Made by a program: the position numbers and the translations under genes | Source of the DNA: Macrostomum lignano | Taxonomy: Eukaryota | Assembly: GCA_002269645.1 (NCBI GenBank) | Contig: NIVC01000936.1 | Span: forward strand, 62,001 to 126,000 | Length of the DNA stretch: 64,000 nucleotides | Direction of reading: 5' to 3' | The notes under the pieces: model-generated | Databases searched by the model: none | What the model was told of the DNA's origin: nothing | What the model saw: only the letters and a program-made list of their open reading frames with translations | Part shown: positions 22,033 to 63,878 of the stretch, piece by piece | How positions within the stretch are numbered: position 1 is the first letter of the stretch | Layout: every line of letters begins with the position of its first letter

Positions 22033-43337
<21,305 letters not shown>

Positions 43338-46463: not shown

Positions 46464-47434
46464 CTAAATGTTCTTGTCTCAAGTCCCATAGCTTTTTATG
46501 TTCTCCTACTAAAGTTTTGTTCTATCGCTCCCAGCCACATCGCTTCTGATTTCCATGGCAACCAAACCAGTTCTAAAGAATAGCGGAACTGGGAGATGCA
46601 TTTCTCAGCCTATATTTCAGCAAACAAAGCAAAAACCCATATTGTAAGTTTTGAGATTTTTCCAAGAAAGAAACTGCCTTTGCAAATCGCGACTTGCGTG
46701 ACCGCCCGTCTCTCGCGCCGATTTTGCCAATTTCCCTGACAAATTTGACATGTTGGCATCAAGACGCGCTGCGGTGCTCACTACCCAGTTTGAGCCTGTC
46801 CTCGGCTGAACTCGAATTGAGTTGATTCGAATTCCTTAATTAGCTGCATTGACAGGCCCGCCTAGCAACTGACACAGATCAGAAGTCTCTGAGATCTACT
46901 GATAATTATGGGATGTCAATGTAATAATTTTGGATGGCAGCTGGAGCAGCGGAACTCCTGTGATGACGCCAGCATCGTCTGCGGGATGACATCTGAATGA
47001 CAGCAGCATCTTCATAACAAGAGTCTGTGTGACAGAATCTTCATGAAAAGAGTCTGTATGACAGCATCTTCATAACAAGAGTCTGTATGACAGCATCTTC
47101 ATGACAAGAGTCTGTATGACAGCATCTTCATGACAAGAGTCTGTATGACAGAATCTTCATAACCTGAGTCTGTATGACTGCATTTTCTGACAGCATATTT
47201 ATGACAGCATCTTCATGACAGCATCTTCATGACAGCATCTTCATGACAGCATCTTCATAACAGCATCTTCATGACAGCATCTTCATGACAGCATCTTCAT
47301 GACAGCATCTTCATGACAGTGTCTTCATGACAGCATCTTCATGACAGCATCTTCATGACAGCATCTTCATGACAGCATCTTCATGACAGCATCTTCATAA
47401 CAGCATCTTCATGACAGCATCTTCATGACAGCAT

Positions 47435-49146
47435 CAGGGACTACTCAAACATCGGGACGGGAAACTAGGCAAATCATGGCGAAGTTTTTACGAGGCTGGT
47501 TAAATCTATGGCCGCGCCAATGCAGCAGTAGCTATTTCAATATTTAGTTTTTTGTCTTTCTCTCTTGAACGGTGATGGATGATGGAGCCACCTTCGATGA
47601 TCTCCGGACAAGTCCCTTAAAGAATGTGTTTGTTGCTCTTCGTGCCACACCTTGGACGTTGAAGTCAATGTAATGGAAGAAATTTTCAGCTATAGTTGTA
47701 AATAGTGCCTGCACTCTCGTTGCACAAACGGGTGAGTGGGCAGTGAAGTAGCGTAGCAGAGAATTAGAAATGAAAACAGCCACTCTGGGGGTGCCGTAGC
47801 TTTCCCCGCGATAGTAACAGCACACCAAAAATACAATTAGTCGGGGGCTATTCCCATTCCTGCGAGTTGATGTCTTAGTAAGGCCGACTTCCGGATGATA
47901 GTAGTGCTATATCTGCGAGCAGTCGGTGAGTCCAGTGTTAGCTTTAACTGTTCCAGCAAGAATTTAATAGTTGGATTCGAAATCTCTAGCGCTGCGCTGT
48001 CAATGGCGAATATGTTGCTTTTCATGAGATACGAAATCTCGTTCTCAACTGAAAACTCTGAGTTGTTGCATCGTACGATAATTGCATCCAGTTGCGACCA
48101 AAACTTCAGCGTGGGTTGAAATCCAAGTAGGTCGTGAACACTAATTGGCGTGTGCATTATGTAGGCGCGAACAGCAAAATTTGGCGAAATAAATAATCGA
48201 ACAAGCATGTCGCCATTGGAGTCCAATGAAAACATATATAAATCCTGCTGAAAAAATGTAACCACTAAGGAGTGGCGTTTGACTATTTCAGAGTCCTGTA
48301 CGGAGTCACAGAAACCATTCCACGAACATTTGGTGTCGCTCAGCTGAAACTCCTCTAATTCATCCGCTAAGCCACCTCGTGCGTCAGAGAGAACACCTCT
48401 CGTCTTCACATCTCTATTGCGTTCTAAAATGTAAAAACATTTATGGTGGCAACTTTGAGGAAGTTTAGATTATATGAACCAAATGCTAAAGTCTAAAGTA
48501 CAAATAGGTATTCAAAGTATAGTCATACCTTGGTTCTGGACCAGGCAAGATGGAGGAACACCATTGAGAATAGAAGGCGGATCCTTTGGTGCCTCAAATC
48601 GTCGCTTTTTCACCATTGTTGTGTCCGGTGGCCAGTGTTTGGCGCAGATTCCCATGTGATCTGTAACGGACTGAAAGGCGGAATAAAGGAAAAAATTGCA
48701 TATAATATATTAGCACAATTTACCTTATAGTAAATAGCGCCTACCTCTAGGATGTTCGGCAGGGCCTTTTTCCATCGCTCTCGCTCAACCGAGTCCTTCG
48801 GAAACAGATGGACTTTCGTAGCTAATCGTTCGGACTCGTAATTTGACTTGCAGCCAACAACGCTGCACTTTCTTGGCATTGATGCCAACAACACAAGCAG
48901 AAAAATCGAGCTTGTCCTACGCGTCTGCCAGAAACTTAGCTGCTATAATATAATGCAAGCATCCCTGCTAGACTGCAGTGGAAATAACGTATCACAAGCT
49001 TCAAATAATAAAAAATAACCATAGACAACAAAGTCTCGCTCTATACAAATAAGCCAGCCAGCCTCGTCAGCTGCTAACAAACCAGCCTCGTAAAAACTTC
49101 GCCATGATTTGCCTAGTTTCCCGTCCCGATGTTTGAGTAGTCCCTG
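47435..49146 (-). mobile_element. P-element-superfamily DNA transposon, internally deleted (1712 bp)
   Basis: Perfect 67-bp TIRs (CAGGGACTACTCAAACATCGGGACGGG...GAGGCTGGTT); 8-bp flanks GACAGCAT / AACAGCAT. Carries a THAP ORF plus a frameshifted transposase C-terminal remnant (LLSRGKLRHP..RRATNTFFK) at ~47544-47830. Confidence 0.88.
47837..48879 (-). CDS. THAP-domain truncated P-element transposase (287 aa). Exons 48879-48745, 48670-48529, 48423-47837
   Basis: Three GT-AG exons in phase (135+142+587 nt). MPRKCSVVGC..HLFPKD..RERWKKAL..GICAKHW..PPSIL is a C2CH THAP signature; FLLEQLKL..RRYS is a P-transposase motif; stop codon precedes the catalytic domain. Confidence 0.82.
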
Positions 49147-51132
49147 AACAGCATCTTCATGACAGCATCTTCATGACAGCATCTTCATGACAGCATCTTC
49201 ATGACAGCATCTTCATGACAGCATCTTCATGACAGCATCTTCATGACAGCATCTTCATAACAGCGTCTTCATGACAGCATCTTCATGACAGCATCTTCAT
49301 GACAGCATCTTCATGACAGCATCTTCATGACAGCATCTTCATGACAGCATCTTCATGACAGCATCTTCATAACAGCATCTTCATGACAGCATCTTCATGA
49401 CAGCATCTTCATGACAGCATCTTCATAACAGCATCTTCATGACAGCGTCTTCATGACAGCATCTTCATGACAGCATCTTCATGACAGCATCTTCATGACA
49501 GCATCTTCATGACAGCATCTTCATGACAGCATCTTCATGACAGCATCTTCATAACAGCGTCTTCATGACAGCATCTTCATGACAGCATCTTCATGACAGC
49601 ATCTTCATGACAGCATCTTCATGACAGCATCTTCATGACAGCATCTTCATAACAGCGTCTTCATGACAGCATCTTCATGACAGCATCTTCATGACAGCAT
49701 CTTCATGACAGCGTCTTCATGACAGCATCTTCATGACAGCATCTTCATGACAGCATCTTCATAACAGCGTCTTCATGACAGCATCTTCATGACAGCATCT
49801 TCATGACAGCATCTTCATGACAGCGTCTTCATGACAGCATCTTCATGACAGCATCTTCATGACAGCATCTTCATGACAGCATCTTCATGACAGCGTCTTC
49901 ATGACAGCATCTTCATGACAGCATCTTTATGACAGCATCTTCATGACAGCATCTTCATGACAGCATCTTCATGACAGCATCTTCATAACAGCATCTTCAT
50001 GACAGCATCTTCATAACAGCGTCTTCATGACAGCATCTTCATGACAGCATCTTCATGACAGCATCTTCATGACAGCGTCTTCATGACAGCATCTTCATGA
50101 CAGCATCTTCATGACAGCATCTTCATGACAGCATCTTCATGACAGCGTCTTCATGACAGCATCTTCATGACAGCATCTTTATGACAGCATCTTCATGACA
50201 GCATCTTCATGACAGCATCTTCATGACAGCATCTTCATAACAGCATCTTCATGACAGCATCAGAGATGCCAAATAGCTTCAACCCTGGTTGGCTGCACTG
50301 CACTGCCTGCAGACTGGCTAACCAATGAACGGGCCATGCTGCAGTGAGTATGCGGGCCGGCTGCCCATAGGTAAAAATGTTTTAAAGCCGCAGAGCCGAC
50401 CGAAGCATCCCAGTTGCGCGAAAATTATTTTTAAAAACTGCGAGCTTTGTTCCTCATTGAAAAAGTTCGGCTTGCTCTGCAACTGTTTCGGCCGAAATCT
50501 CAAAGGTGAGAGGCGGTGACATTAAATCATTGGTTTGGGATCTGAGTGGCTTCGAAATCTTATTATCTGAGGTGAAAAGAAGGCAGCAGATCCGAGTAGG
50601 CACCGAGATTTACAACTTTCCAAGTTGGACTCAAGGCGCCAGAAGCGCGAATCACCATGGAACACGCAGTCGCTCACGCAGGGTGTTACAGCAGTCCTGA
50701 CTTGTTTTTTAGTAGGGAAATTGTTCCCTGTGTCAAGAATCTTTCCTTGGCTAATCAAGGGCTGCTTCTTTACTGCAGCAGGTGGGAAAGCACCCGCTGC
50801 GATGGCCTCAAGAACAAGGAGACCAGGCGCATGCGGTGACTGCATTGTGGCCAATTTTAGCATGCAGCTGCTTCTGCAGCAGAGCTGGCAAAGTATTCTC
50901 AAGTGGGTCTCAGTCCCCAGGGCAGCGATGGAGGCAGCTGCGCTTGAGAAAATGAAGAGCAGTTTTAAAGGCAAGTTTTTTGCGCCTGGGAGAAGGCTGA
51001 AAAGGCTGGAAAACACCGCGGGAATGAGACGGGGAGAAATTCGAGAAATATTGAAACTGAACCGATTTGAACTCAGTGCCATTTGACAATTACATTTGCG
51101 CTCCTCTTTCAAATTTGAAGAACTGCTAGAAG

Positions 51133-52886
51133 ATGCACCGACTGTCGATCCTGCTGCTGGCTGCCGGACTGCTGGCTACCGGACTCGCCTGCTGCGCTTC
51201 TGGTGAGCTGCTCTGACTGCTCTGGCTGTGTGAACAGTGGCTGTGTGAACAGTGGCTGTGTGAACAGTGGCTGTGTGAACAGTGGCTGTGTGAACAGTGG
51301 CTGTGTGAACAGTGGCTGTGTGAACAGTGGCTGTGTGAACAGTGGCTGTGTGAACAGTGGCTGTGTGAACAGTGGCTGTGTGAACAGTGGCTGTGTGAAC
51401 AGTGGCTGTGTGAACAGTGGCTTTGTGAACAGTGGCTGTGTGAACAGTGGCTGTGTGAACATGACTCTTTGCAGGCGCCGCCGCTGCCGCTCCGCCGGCC
51501 GCCGACTCCGACTTGGCCGCCGCCGCCAGCCGCCACGAGCCGGTCCGCTTCAAGAAAGGCTTCCACTTCTTCAGGCTGCGCCGTCGCCCGTCGGCCGAAG
51601 AGGTGTGCAGCATCGATCCGGACTCTGCGGCGGCCGTGATGGCAGCTGTTGTGAGTTGATGGACTCGGTGACTGACTGTGGTACTGGGGACCTGCCATGG
51701 ACAACTAAATTAGATGGACGATGGGGGGGGGCAGAGCAGCTCAGCGGTGAACGCGGCTGAATCTCGCGCTACGAACCCCTGGTTCGATTCCGTTCGATTC
51801 ATTTGGGGCTTGTGAACTAAAATTGGCCGGGCGGGGGTTCGTGCAGTTCACAGCCAAGAGAGCCTTAACCCCCAGCTCATGTACACCCTGTGTGAGCGCG
51901 TGTACGAGTGCGTGCCTGCGTACAGTATTGTGATGTCACCGAAGGACGATGTCACCGAAGGACGATGTCACCGAAGGACGATGTCACCGAAGGACGATGT
52001 CACCGAAGGACGATGTCACCGAAGGACGATGTCACCGAAGGACGATGTCACCGAAGGACGATGTTACCGAAGGACGATGTCACCGAAGGACGATGTCACC
52101 GAAGGAAAATGTCACCGAAGGACGATGTCACCGAAGGACGATGTCACCGAAGGACGATGTCACCGAAGGAAAATGTCACCGAAGGACGATGTCACCGAAG
52201 GACGATGTCACCGAAGGACGATGTTACCGGGGTGCCCGCAGCCCTGCCTGCATTTTCATAAAACTGTTGCATCAATAATTTTTTAAAAAAACCTTAGTTG
52301 CTTCTGGAAAGAGAGTCACGAATTTACATGTAGAAACTGAAAGCTTCCATTCTACGTATTTTCCCATTGAAATTGCTCAATTCCCAAGTGTGAGACCCTC
52401 CCGCTTTAATTGTCCACGAATTCTCGGCCGCATGTCCAGTAGAAGGTGGGAAAACGCTCAGAGCTCAGTGCAGGGCTGAAGCCCTCGGCTCGCAACAAAA
52501 ACTTGTTGCCTTCAATTAAACTTGCAAGACGCGGAAGGCGCGTGCTTGAGTAGTCCGTGCGCGAGAATTGAAGACAATAGCGCGCCGCAAGCAGCTAATT
52601 ATTAATTTAATGAGCCCGCTAGCAACGCCAGCGGACACCATCGGGTGTGGAAGACGGAAGTTCTTGCTTGTTACTGGTTGGAGACCAGGAGAAAAAAGTC
52701 AGTTTTAGCCAACTCTGTTTCCCATCACAATTATTCATCTAGCGGCTGCTCCACCCACCGCTGTCATGTCTGCTCTGCAGCTCAGTTGCCCCCCCATCCC
52801 GCTTTCAGCGTGCGGCCAAGGCTGGGCAGCTTTGCGAGAGGGACCGCGCCTTCCTGCGTCTGATGGTCAGCGAGCTGCTGCAGTGA
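51133..52886 (+). CDS. Neuropeptide prohormone (107 aa), HFFRL family (flatworm SPP-18/NPP-28-like). Exons 51133-51202, 51475-51650, 52809-52886
   Basis: Signal peptide MHRLSILLLAAGLLATGLACCAS. GT-AG exons in phase (70+176+78 nt) with GTGAGC/GTGAGT donors. Single peptide GFHFFRL flanked by KK and RRR; C-terminal region has two Cys. Confidence 0.82.
51228..51460. repeat. 15-bp minisatellite (GGCTGTGTGAACAGT)n in prohormone intron 1
   Basis: About 15 copies filling the intron. Confidence 0.93.
51932..52228. repeat. 16-bp minisatellite (GATGTCACCGAAGGAC)n in prohormone intron 2
   Basis: About 18 copies. Confidence 0.93.
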
Positions 52887-58542: not shown

Positions 58543-61500
58543 CTACAGTGAAAGCTGGAACTCATCGCAGGTGCGCACAAATGTGTGATTCATGAGTTGC
58601 GCCGCCGTGAGCCGCTGGCGCGGGTCGATGCGCAGACAGTCCATCAGGAAGCTCTGCGCCTCCCGGTCGAACAGCTGGTCCGGGTAGCGGCTGGAGGGGT
58701 CCTGCAGCGGCACCTGCTCAGTCTGGACCAGAAAGCCCACTTTGAAGTAGATGGCGCCCTCCTGCGGCAGGTCGTGCCAAGGCGGCTTGCCGGTCAGCAT
58801 CTGCCACACCACGCAGCCGAGGCCCCAGACGTCGCCGGGCGGTTCGCCGCGGGACTCGCCGCGGATTCGCTCGGGACTGAGGAAGGTCAAAGTGCCAACC
58901 GGCGTGTAGTGCTGCTGCTGCTGCTGCTGCTGATGCGTGTCGGAGTTGGCGTCAGCGGCGCCCATGAGATCGGGATGATTCTCGGTGTAGCGCCGGGTCC
59001 GGTGTCGCAGGCAGGTCTGGGCGCAGTCGAAGTCGCCGAGTTTGAGCTTGGCCGGCGAGGAGGTCAAAAACACGTTGGCAGATTTCACGTCCCGGTGGGT
59101 GAGCTTCTGCTCGTGAATGTAGGCCAGGGCTTTGGTGAGCAGCCCAGTGTAGTCCCGGATCATACGCAGGTCCAGGCCCTGGCCGGAGGCGCTGTGCAGG
59201 TCGCCAGCGTCGCACAGCTCCATGAACAGCAGCGCCTCGGTGCGGTGCACCTCGATGCCGTAGTACTGGACGATGTTGTCATGCGACAGCCGCTTGACCG
59301 CCTCGAACTCGTCTATGAGATCCTTCAGGTCGGACTCCGGCGCTCTGGACAGGTCGATCTTCTTCACCACCATGCTGACGCCATTGTCCAGGTTCACCGC
59401 CGTGAAGGCCACACCGCGGCCGCCTTCGCCTAGCCGGGTGCCGCGCTTCCACCGGTGCGGGAAGTGGTGGTATTTGGCCGCCGTGGCGTTTCGCGCTCCG
59501 CCGCGCTGCTGCGGGTCGATGTCTTGCCTGACGTGGCCGATCCAGCGCTTGCTGGTGAGGAACTCCTGGCGGGCGGACTCCAGCGACTCAATAGCTCGCA
59601 TGCGGCGCTCCTGCCAGCGTGGGCGGAGGGTCCGGAGTTAAGTGTTTAAGTACTAGAAAATAATTTTGATGTCTTTTTAAAGGACCCGGACACCTATAAC
59701 TGACTCGGACACCTATAATAGATTCGGACACCAATAATTGACTCGGACACCTATAATAGATTCGGACACCTATAACTGACTCGGACACCTATAATAGATT
59801 CGGACACCAATAATAGACTCGGACACCTATAATAGACTCGGACACCTATAATAGACTCGGACACCTATAATAGACTCGGACACCTATAATAGACTCGGAC
59901 ACCTATAATAGACTCGGACACCTATAATAGACTCGGACACCTATAATAGACTCGGACACCTATAATAGACTCGGACACCTATAATAGACTCGGACACCTA
60001 TAATAGACTCGGACACCTATAATAGACTCGGACACCTATAATAGACTCGGACACCTATAATAGACTCGGACACCTATAATTCACTCAAACACCTATAATT
60101 TACTCGGACACCTCAGAATCGGAAGCATAAATGACCCTAGGCATCAATAATCGAATTCAGAAAACTATACTCAAACTCGGACACCTAACAATAGATACTC
60201 GGACACCTAACAATAGGCACTCGGACACCTAACAATAGGCACTCGGACACCTAACAATGGAAACTCGGATATCTAACAATAGGCACTCGGACACCTAACA
60301 ATAGAAACTCGGATATCTAACAATAGGCACTCGGACACCTAACAATAGGCACTCGGACACCTAACAATGGAAACTCGGATATCTAACAATAGGCACTCGG
60401 ACACCTAACAATAGAAACTCGGATATCTAACAATAGGCACTCGGACACCTAACAATAGGCACTCGGACACCTAACAATAGAAACTCGGATATCTAACAAT
60501 AGGCACTCGGACACCTAACAATAGATACTCGGACACCTAACAATAGAAACTCAGACGGACCCTAACAATAGGCACTCGGACACCTAACAATAGAAACTCA
60601 GACGGACCCTAACAATAGGCACTCGGACACCTAACAATAGACACTCAGGCAGAAACCTCCCTCGGACACCTAACAATAGATTCGGACACCCAAAAATAGA
60701 TTTGGACACCCTTTAACCTGTTTCGAATCGTTTCATTTCACTCACGTGCAACCCGCCGCCCTGATTGCCCCTGTTTTGCCGGCGCCTGACTTCCTCGGAC
60801 GCGCCGCCTACAGCAGCAGCCGAGGTCACCCTGGTTTGCTGAGAAGGCGTCGACGAATGCTTAGCGGCGTTGCCAACCAGATGGCTGATGCAGTCGTTCA
60901 CCAGTCTGCGGAATTTGTCAAACAATTCGCGGCTGACCAGGCCAACCAGGCCGGGCACGCAGATGGTCAGCAGGAAGTCGCAGAACGGGCTGGACCAGCG
61001 GGGCAGGCGGCCCTAGCCAATTAGTATAGGAATTGCTATTCAGCTACTGAACCGGAAGTGCAATTATCAACAATAACAGTAGCCTAAATATCGAACCGGA
61101 AGTGGAACTATCAACAATAACAGTAGCCTAAATATCAAACCGGAAGTGGAATTATCAACAATAACAGTAGCCTAAATATCGAACCGGAAGTGGAATTATC
61201 AACAATAACAGTAGCCTAAATATCGAACCGGAAGTGGAATTATCAACAATAACAGTAGCCTAAATATCGAACCGGAAGTGGAACTATCAACAATAACAGT
61301 AGCCTAAATATCGAACCGGAAGTGGAACTATCAACAATAACAGTAGCCTAAATATCGAACCGGAAGTGGAATTATCAACAATAACAGTAGCCTAAATATC
61401 GAACCGGAAGTGGAATTATAAACAATAACAGTAGCCTAAATATCGAACCGGAAGTGGAATTATCAACAATAACAGTAGCCTAAATATCGAACCGGAAGTG

Positions 61501-63878
61501 GAACTATCAACAATAACAGTAGCCTAAATATCGAACCGGAAGTGGAATTATAAACAATAACAGTAGCCTAAATATCGAACCGGAAGTGGAACTATCAACA
61601 ATAACAGTAGCCTAAATATCGAACCGGAAGTGGAACTATCAACAATAACAGTAGCCTAAATATCGAACCGGAAGTGGAACTATCAACAATAAAAGTAGCC
61701 TAAATATCGAACCGGAAGTGGAACTATCAACAATAACAGTAGCCTAAATATCGAACCGGAAGTGGAATTATCAACAATAACAGTAGCCTAAATATCAAAG
61801 CGGAAGTGGAATTATCAACAATAACAGTAGCCTAAATATCGAACCGGAAGTGGAATTATAAACAATAACAGTAGCCTAAATATCAAACCGGAAGTGGAAT
61901 TATCAACAATAACAGTAGCCTAAATATCGAACCGGAAGTGGAATTATAAACAATAACAGTAGCCTTAATATCGAACCGGAAGTGGAATTATCAACAATAA
62001 CAGTAGCCTAAATATCGAACCGGAAGTGGAACTATAAACAATAACAGTAGCCTAAATATCGAACCGGAAGTGGAACTATCAACAATAACAGTAGCCTAAA
62101 TATCGAACCGGAAGTGGAACTATCAACAATAACAGTAGCCTAAATATCGAACCGGAAGTGGAACTATCAACAATAACAGTAGCCTAAATATCGAACCGGA
62201 AGTGGAACTATCAACAATAACAGTAGCCTAAATATCGAACCGGAAGCGGAACTATCAACAATAACAGTAGCCTAAATATCGAACCGGAAGTGGAATTATC
62301 AACAATAACAGTAGCCTAAATATCGAACCGGAAGTGGAACTATCAACAATAACAGTAGCCTAAATATCGAACCGGAAGTGGAACTATCAACAATAACAGT
62401 AGCCTAAATATCGAACCGGAAGTGGAATTATCAACAATAACAGTTGCCTAAATATCGAACCGGAAGTGGAATTATCAACAATAAGAGTAGCCTAAATATC
62501 GAACCGGAAGTAAAATTATCAACAATAACAGTAGCTTAAATATCGAACCGGAAGTGGAACAAACAATACACAGCTGCTTACCTGACCCTCCTCGCAGCGG
62601 TCTTTAATAAAAGTCCAGTAAAGCTCGACCAGTTCCACAAAATGGGTGAACAGCTCAACCCGGTTAACTTCATCGGCGTAAAGGCGAACCAGCTCTTTGT
62701 TGTACTCGAACGAAACTCGAAAGCCCTGGTGCAGGGCGTCCTGCGGCCAGATGTCGCCTTCGTCTTGCACCATGCGGCGTAGGCAGCCAAAAATGTCTTG
62801 GCGCAACGAGTGGGCGCTTCGCTTGAGCTGCTGCATGTGCTGAAAGACGTCGTCGAAACAGCAGATGGCCTGGTCGCGCGGTACGATGAAGCCATTCAGC
62901 TTGTTTTCCAGGATGCTGCTCAGTGCCTCGAGCTCGGAGCTGTTCGGGGAGATTAGCAAAATCTCTTTCTTCTTGTTCTTGGGCACCTAGATTAGTTGAG
63001 ATGGGTTCGGTGAGTCACTTCCTTGTTTTTAGTAAAGAAAGAAATCAGGTTGTTTGGGGACACACATTGATATTCTACTAGTCAGGGTCATTCAAGGTCA
63101 CAGTGAAGATCCTACCGCTGAGTCCCCACACAGAGGGTCACTCTTAGCAACCTAGCCAAGGTCATTTAGGGTCACTTTTGACACCCTAGCCAAGATCATT
63201 TAAGGTCACTTTTAACATGCTAGCCAAGGTCATTTAAGGTCACTTTTAACATGCTAGCCAAGGTCATTTAGGGTCACTTTTAACATGCTAGCCAAGGTCA
63301 TTTAGGGTCACTTTTGACATCCTAGACAAGGTCATTTAGGGTCACTTTTAACATGCTAGCCAAGGTCATTTAGGGTCACTTTTGACAGCCTAGCCAAGGT
63401 CATTTAAGGTCACTTTTGACATCCTAGCAAAGGTCACCTAAGGTCACTTTTGACATGCTAGCCAAGGTCATTTAGGGTCACTTTTGACAAACTAGCCAAG
63501 GTCATTTAGGGTCACTTTTGACATCCTAGCAAAGGTTATTTAGGGTCATTTTTGACATCCTAGCCAAGATCATTTACGGTTACTTTTGGCGTTCTAGCCA
63601 AGGTCATTTAGGGTCACTTTTGACATGCTAGCCAAGGTAATTTAGTGTCACGGTTAATATTCTAGCGAATAATCCATTTAGGGTCATTAAAAAAGTTCAG
63701 AAGCTAGGGCCTCACCCGAACACTCGCCAAGTTGAGTCTGTACTCGGCATCGGACGACTGAATGGTGACCTCTTCGCCTGTCCAGACCAAATTTTTGTCC
63801 AGAGTTTTGTCCACGGCAACCAGGGGACAGTTCACCGGCCAGTCTCTCTTCTGGTTGGAATTGAGGAAGTCGCTGAGC
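58543..63878 (-). CDS. MAP3K4: MAP3K4/MEKK4-like kinase, 3' exons; gene continues beyond the right edge. Exons 63878-63716, 62986-62582, 61012-60746, 59610-58543
   Basis: Exons in phase. LHQGFRVSFEYNKELVRL..FIKDRCEEGQGRLPRW..CDFL..LVNDCISHLVG and IGHV..RWKRGTRLGEG..YYGIEVHRTE..FMELCDAG..HRDVKSANVFLTSS..KLGDF match recalled MEKK4-specific motifs. Confidence 0.85.
59690..60115. repeat. 19-bp minisatellite (GACTCGGACACCTATAATA)n in MAP3K4 intron
   Basis: Tandem copies. Confidence 0.93.
60172..60712. repeat. ~22-bp minisatellite (ACTCGGACACCTAACAATAGGC)n, related to the 19-bp array
   Basis: Shares the CTCGGACACCTA core. Confidence 0.9.
61045..62555. repeat. 44-bp minisatellite (AACCGGAAGTGGAAYTATCAACAATAACAGTAGCCTAAATATCG)n filling a MAP3K4 intron
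   Basis: About 34 near-identical head-to-tail copies with no unique spacers. Confidence 0.95.
63150..63650. repeat. 34-bp minisatellite (GCCAAGGTCATTTAGGGTCACTTTTGACATGCTA)n in MAP3K4 intron
   Basis: About 14-15 copies. Confidence 0.9.

What the first reader, a model, noticed from the sequence alone, without database searches (positions are those of the whole stretch)
51133..52886. Hidden three-exon neuropeptide prohormone (KK-GFHFFRL-RRR) invisible to the ORF track
Seen: splicing three short exons gives MHRLSILLLAAGLLATGLACCASGAAAAAPPAADSDLAAAASRHEPVRF-KK-GFHFFRL-RRR-PSAEEVCSIDPDSAAAVMAAVRAAKAGQLCERDRAFLRLMVSELLQ*. It has a hydrophobic signal peptide, one heptapeptide (nt 51558-51578) between convertase sites, no amidation Gly, and a C-terminal block with two Cys. 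Recalled knowledge, not verified here: flatworm peptides GYHFFRL (planarian SPP-18) and AYHFFRL (schistosome NPP-28). Inference: this is an orthologue, probably unannotated because both introns are filled with minisatellites that create longer decoy ORFs. The disulfide-capable C-terminal fragment may be a second product.
Basis: partly seen in the sequence, partly recalled or inferred. Interest (0 to 1): 0.7.

Follow-up and report, generated by a model that had tools for sequence, protein, structure and literature searches.

The report
Flatworm HFFRL neuropeptide precursor gene
The three-exon gene is real and encodes a small secreted precursor of the flatworm neuropeptide family xHFFRL, but it is already in GenBank as an unnamed 'hypothetical protein' of Macrostomum lignano, so it is a correct reading of an ordinary member of a known family.

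Summary
KK-GFHFFRL-RRR lies at 51552-51587.

The window is Macrostomum lignano. An identical 107-aa model with the same start and stop is already in GenBank as PAA74592.1, BOX15_Mlig034597g3, 'hypothetical protein'. That annotation was built from RNA-seq transcripts, so 'unannotated' is wrong, although the gene has no functional name.

Family membership is well supported:
- The published planarian SPP-18/-19 and schistosome NPP-28 precursors share the heptapeptide, its basic flanks and the two-Cys tail.
- A profile built without Macrostomum sequences scores this protein 27 bits, against 6.5 or less for 2000 shuffles.
- The Schistosoma mansoni gene has the same three coding exons and intron phases 1 and 0.

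An exhaustive profile search found the family only in flatworms. It also matched flatworm GnRH-like precursors, which carry the same FRL peptides and tail after a GnRH peptide. The closest relatives of this gene are two M. lignano paralogues, so strict 1:1 orthology to spp-18 is doubtful.

Verdict: new member of a known kind, low-to-moderate interest.

The parts
50325..50505 (+). Putative 5' non-coding exon. The start is uncertain. The donor is AAG|GTGAGA at 50505|50506.
   Evidence: The N-terminal extension of an older ML2-assembly model (P0005) maps here and joins directly to 51130. An in-frame TGA lies at 50458-50460. This part is inferred, not shown by reads.
51130..51202 (+). First coding exon. 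The acceptor is CTAG|AAG at 51129|51130 and the ATG is at 51133. It encodes M1-S23 plus the first base of G24, which is the signal peptide.
   Evidence: n-region MHR, h-region L4-A19 (Kyte-Doolittle 1.5-2.5), small residues C-A-S-G at the end. AlphaFold2 gives a helix at 2-22. The GenBank CDS starts at 51133.
51203..51474 (+). Intron 1 (phase 1, GT-AG). Residues 51223-51461 are a 15-mer minisatellite, TGGCTGTGTGAACAG x15.9.
   Evidence: The array has 42.5 copies in the second genomic copy L002.
51475..51650 (+). Coding exon 2: spacer (ending in the decayed first peptide ...SRHEPVRF), KK, GFHFFRL, RRR, and the start of the tail with Cys68.
   Evidence: Best hit of the window to the non-Macrostomum family profile: 17.8 bits, E 4e-4.
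51558..51578 (+). Predicted mature heptapeptide GFHFFRL (free acid, monoisotopic M 922.481). KK at 51552-51557 and RRR at 51579-51587 flank it.
   Evidence: It is the only [KR][KR]-x(1-3)-H[FY]FR[LI] motif in six frames of the window.
51651..52808 (+). Intron 2 (phase 0, GT-AG). It contains a 16-mer minisatellite GATGTCACCGAAGGAC x18.6 at 51932-52229 and a tRNA-like fragment at about 51730-51800.
   Evidence: The array has 13.6 copies in L002. ARAGORN and Rfam call nothing here.
52809..52886 (+). Coding exon 3: the rest of the tail (RAAKAGQLC91ERDRAFLRLMVSELLQ) and the TGA stop at 52884-52886.
   Evidence: Second-ranked six-frame piece against the family profile, collinear with exon 2.

Best explanation
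This is a real, transcribed gene of Macrostomum lignano (BOX15_Mlig034597g3). It has three coding exons and probably one 5' non-coding exon. It encodes a 107-aa secreted prohormone of the flatworm 'FRL-containing' family (Smed-spp-18/-19, Sma/Sja-npp-28).

Inferred mechanism:
1. The signal peptide, encoded by exon 1, directs the precursor into the secretory pathway.
2. A PC2-type convertase cuts at KK and RRR, and a carboxypeptidase trims the basic residues.
3. This releases the non-amidated heptapeptide GFHFFRL. It also releases an N-terminal spacer peptide ending in ...HEPVRF and a 46-residue C-terminal peptide that can form a Cys68-Cys91 bridge.
4. By analogy with planarian spp-18/19, the gene is expressed in discrete neurons, and the peptide acts on an as yet unidentified receptor.

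Evolution: the gene is a paralogue of the flatworm GnRH-like precursor that lacks the GnRH peptide. It most likely arose by duplication within the Macrostomum lineage from a two-peptide gene (HQIFRL + GYHFFRL, like Mlig013730), followed by decay of the first peptide.

Shown here: the gene model, family membership, conserved architecture and intron phases, and the paralogy. Inferred: processing, secretion, neuronal expression and bioactivity.
For: Gene model:
- Exact translation and canonical splice sites.
- Identical 107-aa GenBank model with the identical CDS span. That annotation derives from a genome-guided RNA-seq transcriptome (PMC5730564).
- A second genomic copy keeps all three exons with 1 nt difference each and the same splice sites, while the minisatellite copy numbers differ.

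Family membership:
- Full published precursors of Smed-spp-18/-19 and Sma/Sja-npp-28 (PMC2953531 supplements) align along the whole mature part. Invariant positions are K50, F55-L58, C68, P72, C91, D94 and F97.
- A profile from 8 non-Macrostomum members scores the protein 27.2 bits, against 6.5 or less for 2000 shuffles. The tail alone scores 11.2 against 8.2 or less.
- Tail-only pairwise z-scores are 3.1-5.5 against planarian and trematode members.
- S. mansoni npp-28 has three coding exons with intron phases 1 and 0 at matching places. The two M. lignano paralogues have the same.

Relatives:
- GYHFFRL was detected by mass spectrometry as the free acid in planarians.
- spp-18/19 mark discrete neuronal subpopulations (PMC4214590).
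- M. lignano has a pc2 homologue expressed in the nervous system (PMC4490696).

Paralogy: an exhaustive HMM search of 1.84 billion representatives returns only flatworm proteins. They include Smed-grh-1, a polyclad GnRH-2 and the M. lignano GnRH-like Mlig008027, all with the same FRL peptides and two-Cys tail.
Against: - No read-level RNA evidence, peptidomics or expression data for this M. lignano gene could be examined. The gene id was not found in any searched paper or supplement.
- No SignalP or NeuroPred tool was available, so the signal peptide and cleavage sites are judged by rule of thumb and by analogy.
- The first peptide site is degenerate. Two of the three differences between the genomic copies are non-synonymous (D36Y, S103N), which is compatible with relaxed constraint on part of the protein.
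- The function and receptor of xHFFRL peptides are unknown in any flatworm.
Confidence: 0.88

Rival explanations
1. It is the strict one-to-one orthologue of planarian spp-18 (single-peptide form), inherited from the rhabditophoran ancestor.
For: Like spp-18 and npp-28, it has a single intact xHFFRL peptide and no GnRH peptide. M. lignano has three types (GnRH-like, two-peptide, one-peptide), mirroring planarian grh-1, spp-19 and spp-18.
Against: - Its best matches by far are the M. lignano paralogues. Full-length scores are 181 and 112, against 91 or less for any other species. Tail z-scores are 17.4 and 8.7, against 5.5 or less.
- It shares a private PS(P)SE(Q)EV insertion before Cys1 and a 22-residue Cys spacing with Mlig013730.
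- It retains ...SRHEPVRF-KK, aligned to ...SGHQIFRL-KK, which suggests independent loss of the first peptide.
- The sequences are too short for a robust tree.
Confidence: 0.2
2. The conserved C-terminal two-Cys helical hairpin is the main functional product, either as a hormone or as a sorting or chaperone domain like a GnRH-associated peptide or neurophysin. On this view GFHFFRL is secondary.
For: The tail is conserved from Macrostomum to cestodes and in the GnRH-like precursors, with C...[LIV]C-x-x-D-[RK]-x-[FL] and a spacing of 16-22 residues. AlphaFold2 predicts a helix-loop-helix at 72-84 and 92-106 with the best confidence of the mature part (pLDDT 70-81).
Against: The heptapeptide H-F-F-R-L is the most invariant element of the family. 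It is the peptide actually detected by mass spectrometry in planarians, while no tail peptide is listed there for SPP-18/-19. The two roles do not exclude each other.
Confidence: 0.25
3. It is a redundant, decaying duplicate (incipient pseudogene) in a recently duplicated genome and has no function of its own.
For: The M. lignano DV1 assembly is highly redundant (PMC5730564). Multiple near-identical copies and two paralogues exist. The first peptide has decayed. The two copies differ by 2 non-synonymous and 1 synonymous change. An exon-2-skipping, frameshifted model (P0007) exists.
Against: The reading frame is intact and the splice sites canonical in both copies. Every invariant family residue is retained. 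The transcript-based model shows it is expressed. Three differences are too few for a dN/dS test.
Confidence: 0.08
4. It is a chance ORF assembled from fortuitous splice-like sites.
For: None beyond the short exons and the repeat-rich context.
Against: There is an identical independent gene model, the family profile score is significant, and architecture and intron phases are conserved.
Confidence: 0.01

Closest known systems
Schmidtea mediterranea secreted peptide prohormones SPP-18 and SPP-19 (Collins et al. 2010, PMC2953531; UniProt E3T7U6, E3T7U8)
   Same: Signal peptide, dibasic-flanked non-amidated x[YF]HFFRL heptapeptide, and a two-Cys tail with C-x-I-[PD] ... LC-x-x-D-[KR]-x-F-[LI]. 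The spacer remnant HEPVRF aligns with the HQIFRL peptide of SPP-19.
   Different: Phe instead of Tyr at position 2 of the peptide. Tribasic RRR after it. A 4-5-residue insertion before Cys1 and a 22-residue rather than 20-residue Cys spacing. A long Ala-rich spacer. Only 23-31% identity overall. Probably not a 1:1 orthologue.
Schistosoma npp-28 (Smp_043650, XP_018652713.1) and unnamed orthologues in Fasciola, Opisthorchis, Paragonimus, Fasciolopsis, Calicophoron, Heterobilharzia, Spirometra/Sparganum and Mesocestoides
   Same: A single xHFFRL peptide between basic sites and a two-Cys tail ending ...C-P-E-D-R-x-F-L. Three coding exons with intron phases 1 and 0: intron 1 just after the signal peptide and intron 2 a few residues before Cys2.
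   Different: AYHFFRL (trematodes) or GLHFFRL (cestodes). Shorter tail with Cys spacing 16-18. S. mansoni introns are 14 kb and 5 kb, against 0.27 kb and 1.16 kb here.
M. lignano paralogues Mlig013730 (PAA71739.1; GHQIFRL + GYHFFRL) and Mlig008027 (PAA94807.1; GnRH-like peptide + GHQIFRL + GYHFFRL)
   Same: Same tail, including the 22-residue Cys spacing. Same three-coding-exon structure and phases. Intron 2 is at the same residue, 8 before Cys2, in Mlig013730.
   Different: This gene has lost a functional first FRL peptide and has no GnRH-like peptide. It has GFHFFRL instead of GYHFFRL.
Flatworm GnRH-like precursors (Smed-grh-1, ADC84439.1; Stylochoplana pusilla GnRH-2, BCO16381.1; Notocomplana humilis GnRH-2)
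   Same: After the GnRH peptide they carry two FRL-type peptides between dibasic sites and the same two-Cys tail. Collins et al. already list grh-1, spp-18 and spp-19 together as 'FRL-containing'.
   Different: No pQ-x-[FY]-HFS-x-(G/D)-W-x-P-G-K-R motif occurs in this gene or anywhere in the window. It is therefore not a GnRH precursor but a GnRH-less paralogue.

Membership tests
Flatworm xHFFRL ('FRL-containing') prohormones: spp-18/-19, npp-28 | N-terminal signal peptide | tested here: met
   MHR + 16-residue hydrophobic core + C-A-S-G. Hydropathy 1.5-2.5 over residues 1-23. AlphaFold2 helix at 2-22. Exon 1 ends right after it, as in S. mansoni. SignalP itself was not available.
Flatworm xHFFRL ('FRL-containing') prohormones: spp-18/-19, npp-28 | Heptapeptide x-[YFL]-H-F-F-R-[LI] flanked on both sides by di- or tribasic sites, with no C-terminal Gly (non-amidated) | tested here: met
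   KK-GFHFFRL-RRR at 51552-51587. H54, F55, F56, R57 and L58 are invariant in the 8-sequence alignment.
Flatworm xHFFRL ('FRL-containing') prohormones: spp-18/-19, npp-28 | C-terminal tail with two Cys 16-22 residues apart and the motif [LIV]-C-x-x-D-[RK]-x-[FL]-[LI] | tested here: met
   C68 ... QLC91ERDRAFL. The tail-only profile scores 11.2 bits against 8.2 or less for 2000 shuffles. Tail z-scores are 3.1-5.5 against other orders.
Flatworm xHFFRL ('FRL-containing') prohormones: spp-18/-19, npp-28 | Significant match to a family profile built without the candidate | tested here: met
   27.2 bits, E 3e-7 against a small database, and 6.5 bits or less for 2000 shuffles. In the 1.84-billion-protein search the near-identical copy P0002 scores E 6.7e-15, but that profile included P0001.
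Flatworm xHFFRL ('FRL-containing') prohormones: spp-18/-19, npp-28 | Shared gene structure: three coding exons, intron phases 1 and 0 | tested here: met
   S. mansoni Smp_043650. M. lignano Mlig013730 and Mlig008027.
Flatworm xHFFRL ('FRL-containing') prohormones: spp-18/-19, npp-28 | Mature peptide detectable by mass spectrometry; expression in neurons | not testable with these tools
   Shown only for planarian relatives. No data for the M. lignano gene were found.
GnRH/corazonin-type neuropeptide precursors | pQ-x-[FY]-H-F-S-x-(G/D)-W-x-P-G-[KR][KR] directly after the signal peptide | tested here: not met
   No such motif in the protein or in any of the six frames of the window. It is present in the paralogue Mlig008027 and in Smed-grh-1 and Spus GnRH-2.
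GnRH/corazonin-type neuropeptide precursors | Homology of the region downstream of the GnRH peptide (associated peptide) with flatworm GnRH-like precursors | tested here: met
   A profile without any GnRH-type sequence recovers Smed-grh-1 (E 1.7e-5), Spus GnRH-2 (1.5e-4) and Mlig008027 (3.5e-7) from 1.84 billion proteins. No non-flatworm GnRH precursor was recovered.

The most novel reading that the evidence does not exclude
The xHFFRL prohormones (spp-18/19, npp-28 and this gene) are duplicates of the flatworm GnRH-like precursor that lost the GnRH peptide but kept its 'associated' FRL peptides and two-Cys tail. In trematodes and cestodes, this search found only the GnRH-less form.

If so, the secondary products of a GnRH-type precursor have outlived the hormone itself and carry an independent, strongly conserved signalling function. 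Loss of the upstream peptides would have happened repeatedly, here visibly in progress (HQIFRL to HEPVRF).

The grouping of grh-1, spp-18 and spp-19 as 'FRL-containing' is already in a supplementary table of Collins et al. 2010. The novelty would therefore lie in the evolutionary reading and the Macrostomum and Neodermata data, not in the resemblance.
Probability: 0.6. Interest if true: 0.4.

Novelty: new member of a known kind. Interest (0 to 1): 0.25.

Why it matters
It gives a functional name to an unnamed GenBank/UniProt entry in a regeneration and transgenesis model flatworm. It also extends the xHFFRL peptide family to Macrostomorpha, an early-branching rhabditophoran lineage.

Together with the paralogues found here, it shows that M. 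lignano carries all three precursor types: GnRH-like, two-peptide and one-peptide. That makes M. lignano a tractable system (RNAi, transgenesis) for asking what these peptides and the conserved two-Cys tail do. The same family is present in schistosomes, liver flukes and tapeworms, where neuropeptide signalling is of interest as a drug target.

As a methods point, a reader of raw sequence recovered a correct three-exon model of 70, 176 and 78 nt among minisatellite decoy ORFs.

Tried and rejected
- **Literature search for GFHFFRL, GYHFFRL and AYHFFRL.** Only Collins 2010 holds the motif.
- **Search for the gene id.** 'Mlig034597' was found in no paper text and in no supplement of two M. lignano transcriptome papers.
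- **Papers not held.** Koziol et al. 2016 and McVeigh et al. 2009, the flatworm neuropeptide surveys, are not in the library. Whether an 'Ml-npp-28' was already named there could not be checked.
- **Schistosome GPCR deorphanisation papers.** They do not mention npp-28.
- **ARAGORN and Rfam on the whole window.** Nothing was called, so the tRNA-like piece in intron 2 is at most a degenerate fragment.
- **Profile of the three GnRH-like precursors against 5.8 billion proteins.** Only flatworm hits, with no mollusc or annelid GnRH precursors. A link of the tail to non-flatworm GnRH-associated peptides was not shown.
- **AlphaFold2 model.** Only moderate confidence (mean pLDDT 66), so no fold search was run.
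- **dN/dS between the two genomic copies.** Not attempted, because three differences are too few.
- **Chance-ORF explanation.** Rejected.
Full report
**Observation**

The region was read directly and the three proposed exons were spliced in a script.
- Exons 51133-51202 (70 nt), 51475-51650 (176 nt) and 52809-52886 (78 nt) give 324 nt in frame.
- Both introns have canonical borders: CTG|GTGAGC...TTTGCAG|G and GTT|GTGAGT...CTTTCAG|C. Their phases are 1 and 0.
- The heptapeptide GFHFFRL is at 51558-51578, preceded by KK and followed by RRR, with no Gly that could give an amide.
- The two Cys are residues 68 and 91.
- Tandem Repeats Finder shows a 15-mer x15.9 at 51223-51461 (88% of intron 1). 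It shows a 16-mer x18.6 at 51932-52229 (about a quarter of intron 2).
- The mechanical ORF list shows ORFs of 117-192 aa running through these arrays on both strands. Exon 2 surfaces only as a 48-aa fragment.

The description is therefore correct, apart from intron 2 being only partly minisatellite.

**Source and annotation status**

A search of 5.8 billion proteins returned an identical 107-aa protein, 'hypothetical protein BOX15_Mlig034597g3 [Macrostomum lignano]' (PAA74592.1; UniProt A0A267FNP5). It also returned a 98% copy, BOX15_Mlig034597g1 (PAA66707.1).

The encoding contig is NIVC01000936.1 of assembly GCA_002269645.1. The called gene spans 1754 nt that coincide exactly with window 51133-52886.

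The GenBank annotation of that assembly was produced from a genome-guided RNA-seq transcriptome (StringTie/TACO plus mapped de novo transcripts, with CDS by TransDecoder; PMC5730564). The model is therefore indirect transcript evidence for both junctions.

Several frameshifted or chimeric models from the older ML2 assembly also exist (P0003-P0007).
- Two of them join different upstream donors to the same acceptor 51129|51130, three bases before the ATG. One donor is 50505|50506 (AAG|GTGAGA). The other is 43333|43334, inside the last codons of the upstream ABAT-like aminotransferase gene.
- I read this as a probable 5' non-coding exon and/or a trans-splice acceptor. This is inference.

**Second genomic copy**

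L002 (NIVC01001539.1) carries the same three exons with one substitution each, one synonymous and two non-synonymous (D36Y, S103N). The splice sites are identical and the flanks are about 95% identical. The minisatellites have 42.5 and 13.6 copies instead of 15.9 and 18.6. This fits the known redundancy of the DV1 assembly. It is too little divergence to test for selection.

**Family membership**

The recalled peptides were verified. Collins et al. 2010 (PMC2953531) list GYHFFRL as confirmed by mass spectrometry from SPP-18 and SPP-19, and AYHFFRL as predicted from Sma/Sja-npp-28. The listed mass of 938.48 equals the free acid. The supplements give the full precursors.

| Test | Result |
|---|---|
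| Alignment with spp-18/-19 and npp-28 | Invariant K50, F55-L58, C68, P72, C91, D94, F97, so similarity extends through the two-Cys tail |
| Profile from 8 non-Macrostomum members, whole protein | 27.2 bits, against 6.5 or less for 2000 shuffles |
| Same profile, tail alone | 11.2 bits, against 8.2 or less |
| Six-frame scan of the window with that profile | Exon 2 and exon 3 are the top two of 2934 pieces, collinear on the profile |
| S. mansoni npp-28 gene (Smp_043650, L004) | Three coding exons; phase-1 intron just after the signal peptide; phase-0 intron 5 residues before Cys2 (8 residues here) |

**Wider family**

A profile of eight members was run without a word index against 1.84 billion representatives. 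It gave 19 hits at E of 1e-3 or better, and every one that was identified is a flatworm protein.
- Trematodes: schistosomes, Heterobilharzia, Calicophoron, Fasciola, Fasciolopsis, Opisthorchis, Paragonimus.
- Cestodes: Spirometra/Sparganum and Mesocestoides, with GLHFFRL.
- Planarian: SPP-18 and SPP-19.
- Unexpectedly, GnRH-like precursors: Smed-grh-1 (pQSYHFSNDWLP-amide, then YHTGHQMFRL, GFHYFRL and the two-Cys tail), the polyclad Stylochoplana pusilla GnRH-2, and M. lignano Mlig008027 (QQFHFSHGVNGWKPGKR, GHQIFRL, GYHFFRL, tail).
- M. lignano also has Mlig013730, a 107-aa precursor with GHQIFRL-KK-GYHFFRL and no GnRH peptide.

Both M. lignano paralogues have three coding exons with phases 1 and 0. 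Intron 2 of Mlig013730 lies at the same residue as here.

The xHFFRL prohormones are therefore paralogues of the flatworm GnRH-like precursor that lack the GnRH peptide. Collins et al. already list grh-1, spp-18 and spp-19 together as 'FRL-containing' in a supplementary table, so the resemblance is not new.

No GnRH-like motif exists in this gene or anywhere in the window. A profile of the GnRH-like precursors found no non-flatworm relatives.

**Orthology**

The gene's closest relatives are the M. lignano paralogues.
- Full-length local scores are 181 (Mlig013730) and 112 (Mlig008027), against 91 or less for any other species.
- Composition-controlled tail z-scores are 17.4 and 8.7, against 3.1-5.5.
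- It shares with Mlig013730 a private insertion before Cys1 and the 22-residue Cys spacing.
- Its spacer ends in ...SRHEPVRF-KK, which aligns to ...SGHQIFRL-KK.

I conclude that it probably arose by duplication of a two-peptide gene in the Macrostomum lineage, with decay of the first peptide. This would be parallel to, rather than orthologous with, the one-peptide state of spp-18 and npp-28. The sequences are too short for a robust tree, so this stays an inference.

**Mechanism**

Shown: a secretory-type N-terminus (hydropathy; AlphaFold2 helix at 2-22), basic cleavage sites, and a conserved peptide and tail.

Inferred by analogy:
- Cleavage by a PC2-type convertase. An M. lignano pc2 homologue is expressed in the nervous system and is essential (PMC4490696).
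- Carboxypeptidase trimming to GFHFFRL-OH (M 922.481).
- Release from discrete neurons, as for planarian spp-18/19 (PMC4214590).
- Action on an unknown receptor.

The tail is predicted as a helix-loop-helix (72-84, 92-106; pLDDT 70-81), with each Cys just before a helix. That is compatible with a disulfide-stapled second product or a sorting domain. No tail peptide is listed for SPP-18/-19 in the planarian mass-spectrometry tables, so this remains open.

**Verdict**

It is a new, functionally unnamed member of a known flatworm neuropeptide family, and of modest interest. The link to GnRH-like precursors and the complete three-type set in a transgenic model species are the most useful by-products.

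Noticed in passing
window 29911-42924 (and the whole window): A 13-kb array of the 8-mer TGTCTTAG (about 1626 copies) runs up to or into the upstream aminotransferase gene. Strong tandem arrays (TRF score 400 or more) cover about 35 kb, or 55%, of the window, against 15% simple and tandem repeats genome-wide.
   Followed up: partly
window 51129|51130, with donors at 50505|50506 and 43333|43334: Two older gene models splice different upstream donors onto the same acceptor three bases before the ATG. One donor is a putative 5' non-coding exon. The other lies inside the last codons of the ABAT-like gene 7.8 kb upstream. This suggests a trans-splice acceptor or a polycistronic transcriptional unit.
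   Followed up: partly
window 41133-43337 (+) and 58543-62886 (-): The neighbouring genes are a class-III aminotransferase whose C-terminus resembles GABA transaminase (resemblance from memory), ending at 43337, and an MEKK4-like protein kinase on the minus strand. The same kinase flanks the second copy of the prohormone gene.
   Followed up: no
window ~51730-51800 (intron 2): A tRNA-like fragment with a B-box-like GGTTCGATTCC and an A-box-like GCTCAGCGGTG. ARAGORN and Rfam do not call it, and it is single-copy in the window. It may be a SINE or tRNA relic.
   Followed up: partly
L006 3001-3877 (M. lignano Mlig008027, GnRH-like gene): It encodes an unusually long 14-residue GnRH-like peptide, QQFHFSHGVNGWKPG-KR, with a 3-residue insertion relative to typical lophotrochozoan GnRH. 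A phase-1 intron lies inside the peptide. No alternative GT donor that would remove the insertion was seen.
   Followed up: partly
window 49148-50261 and 47004-47435; L002 8404-9129: A 14-mer minisatellite ACAGCATCTTCATG (79.6 copies) lies directly upstream of the putative 5' exon and recurs 2 kb further upstream. It is conserved in position but not in length in the second genomic copy.
   Followed up: no
protein P0007 (UniRef A0A1I8HWE4, named 'KLK10') and P0003 ('Phycoerythr_ab domain-containing'): Database names attached to older models of this locus are spurious. P0007 is an exon-2-skipping, frameshifted model, and P0003 is a chimera with out-of-frame aminotransferase sequence.
   Followed up: yes
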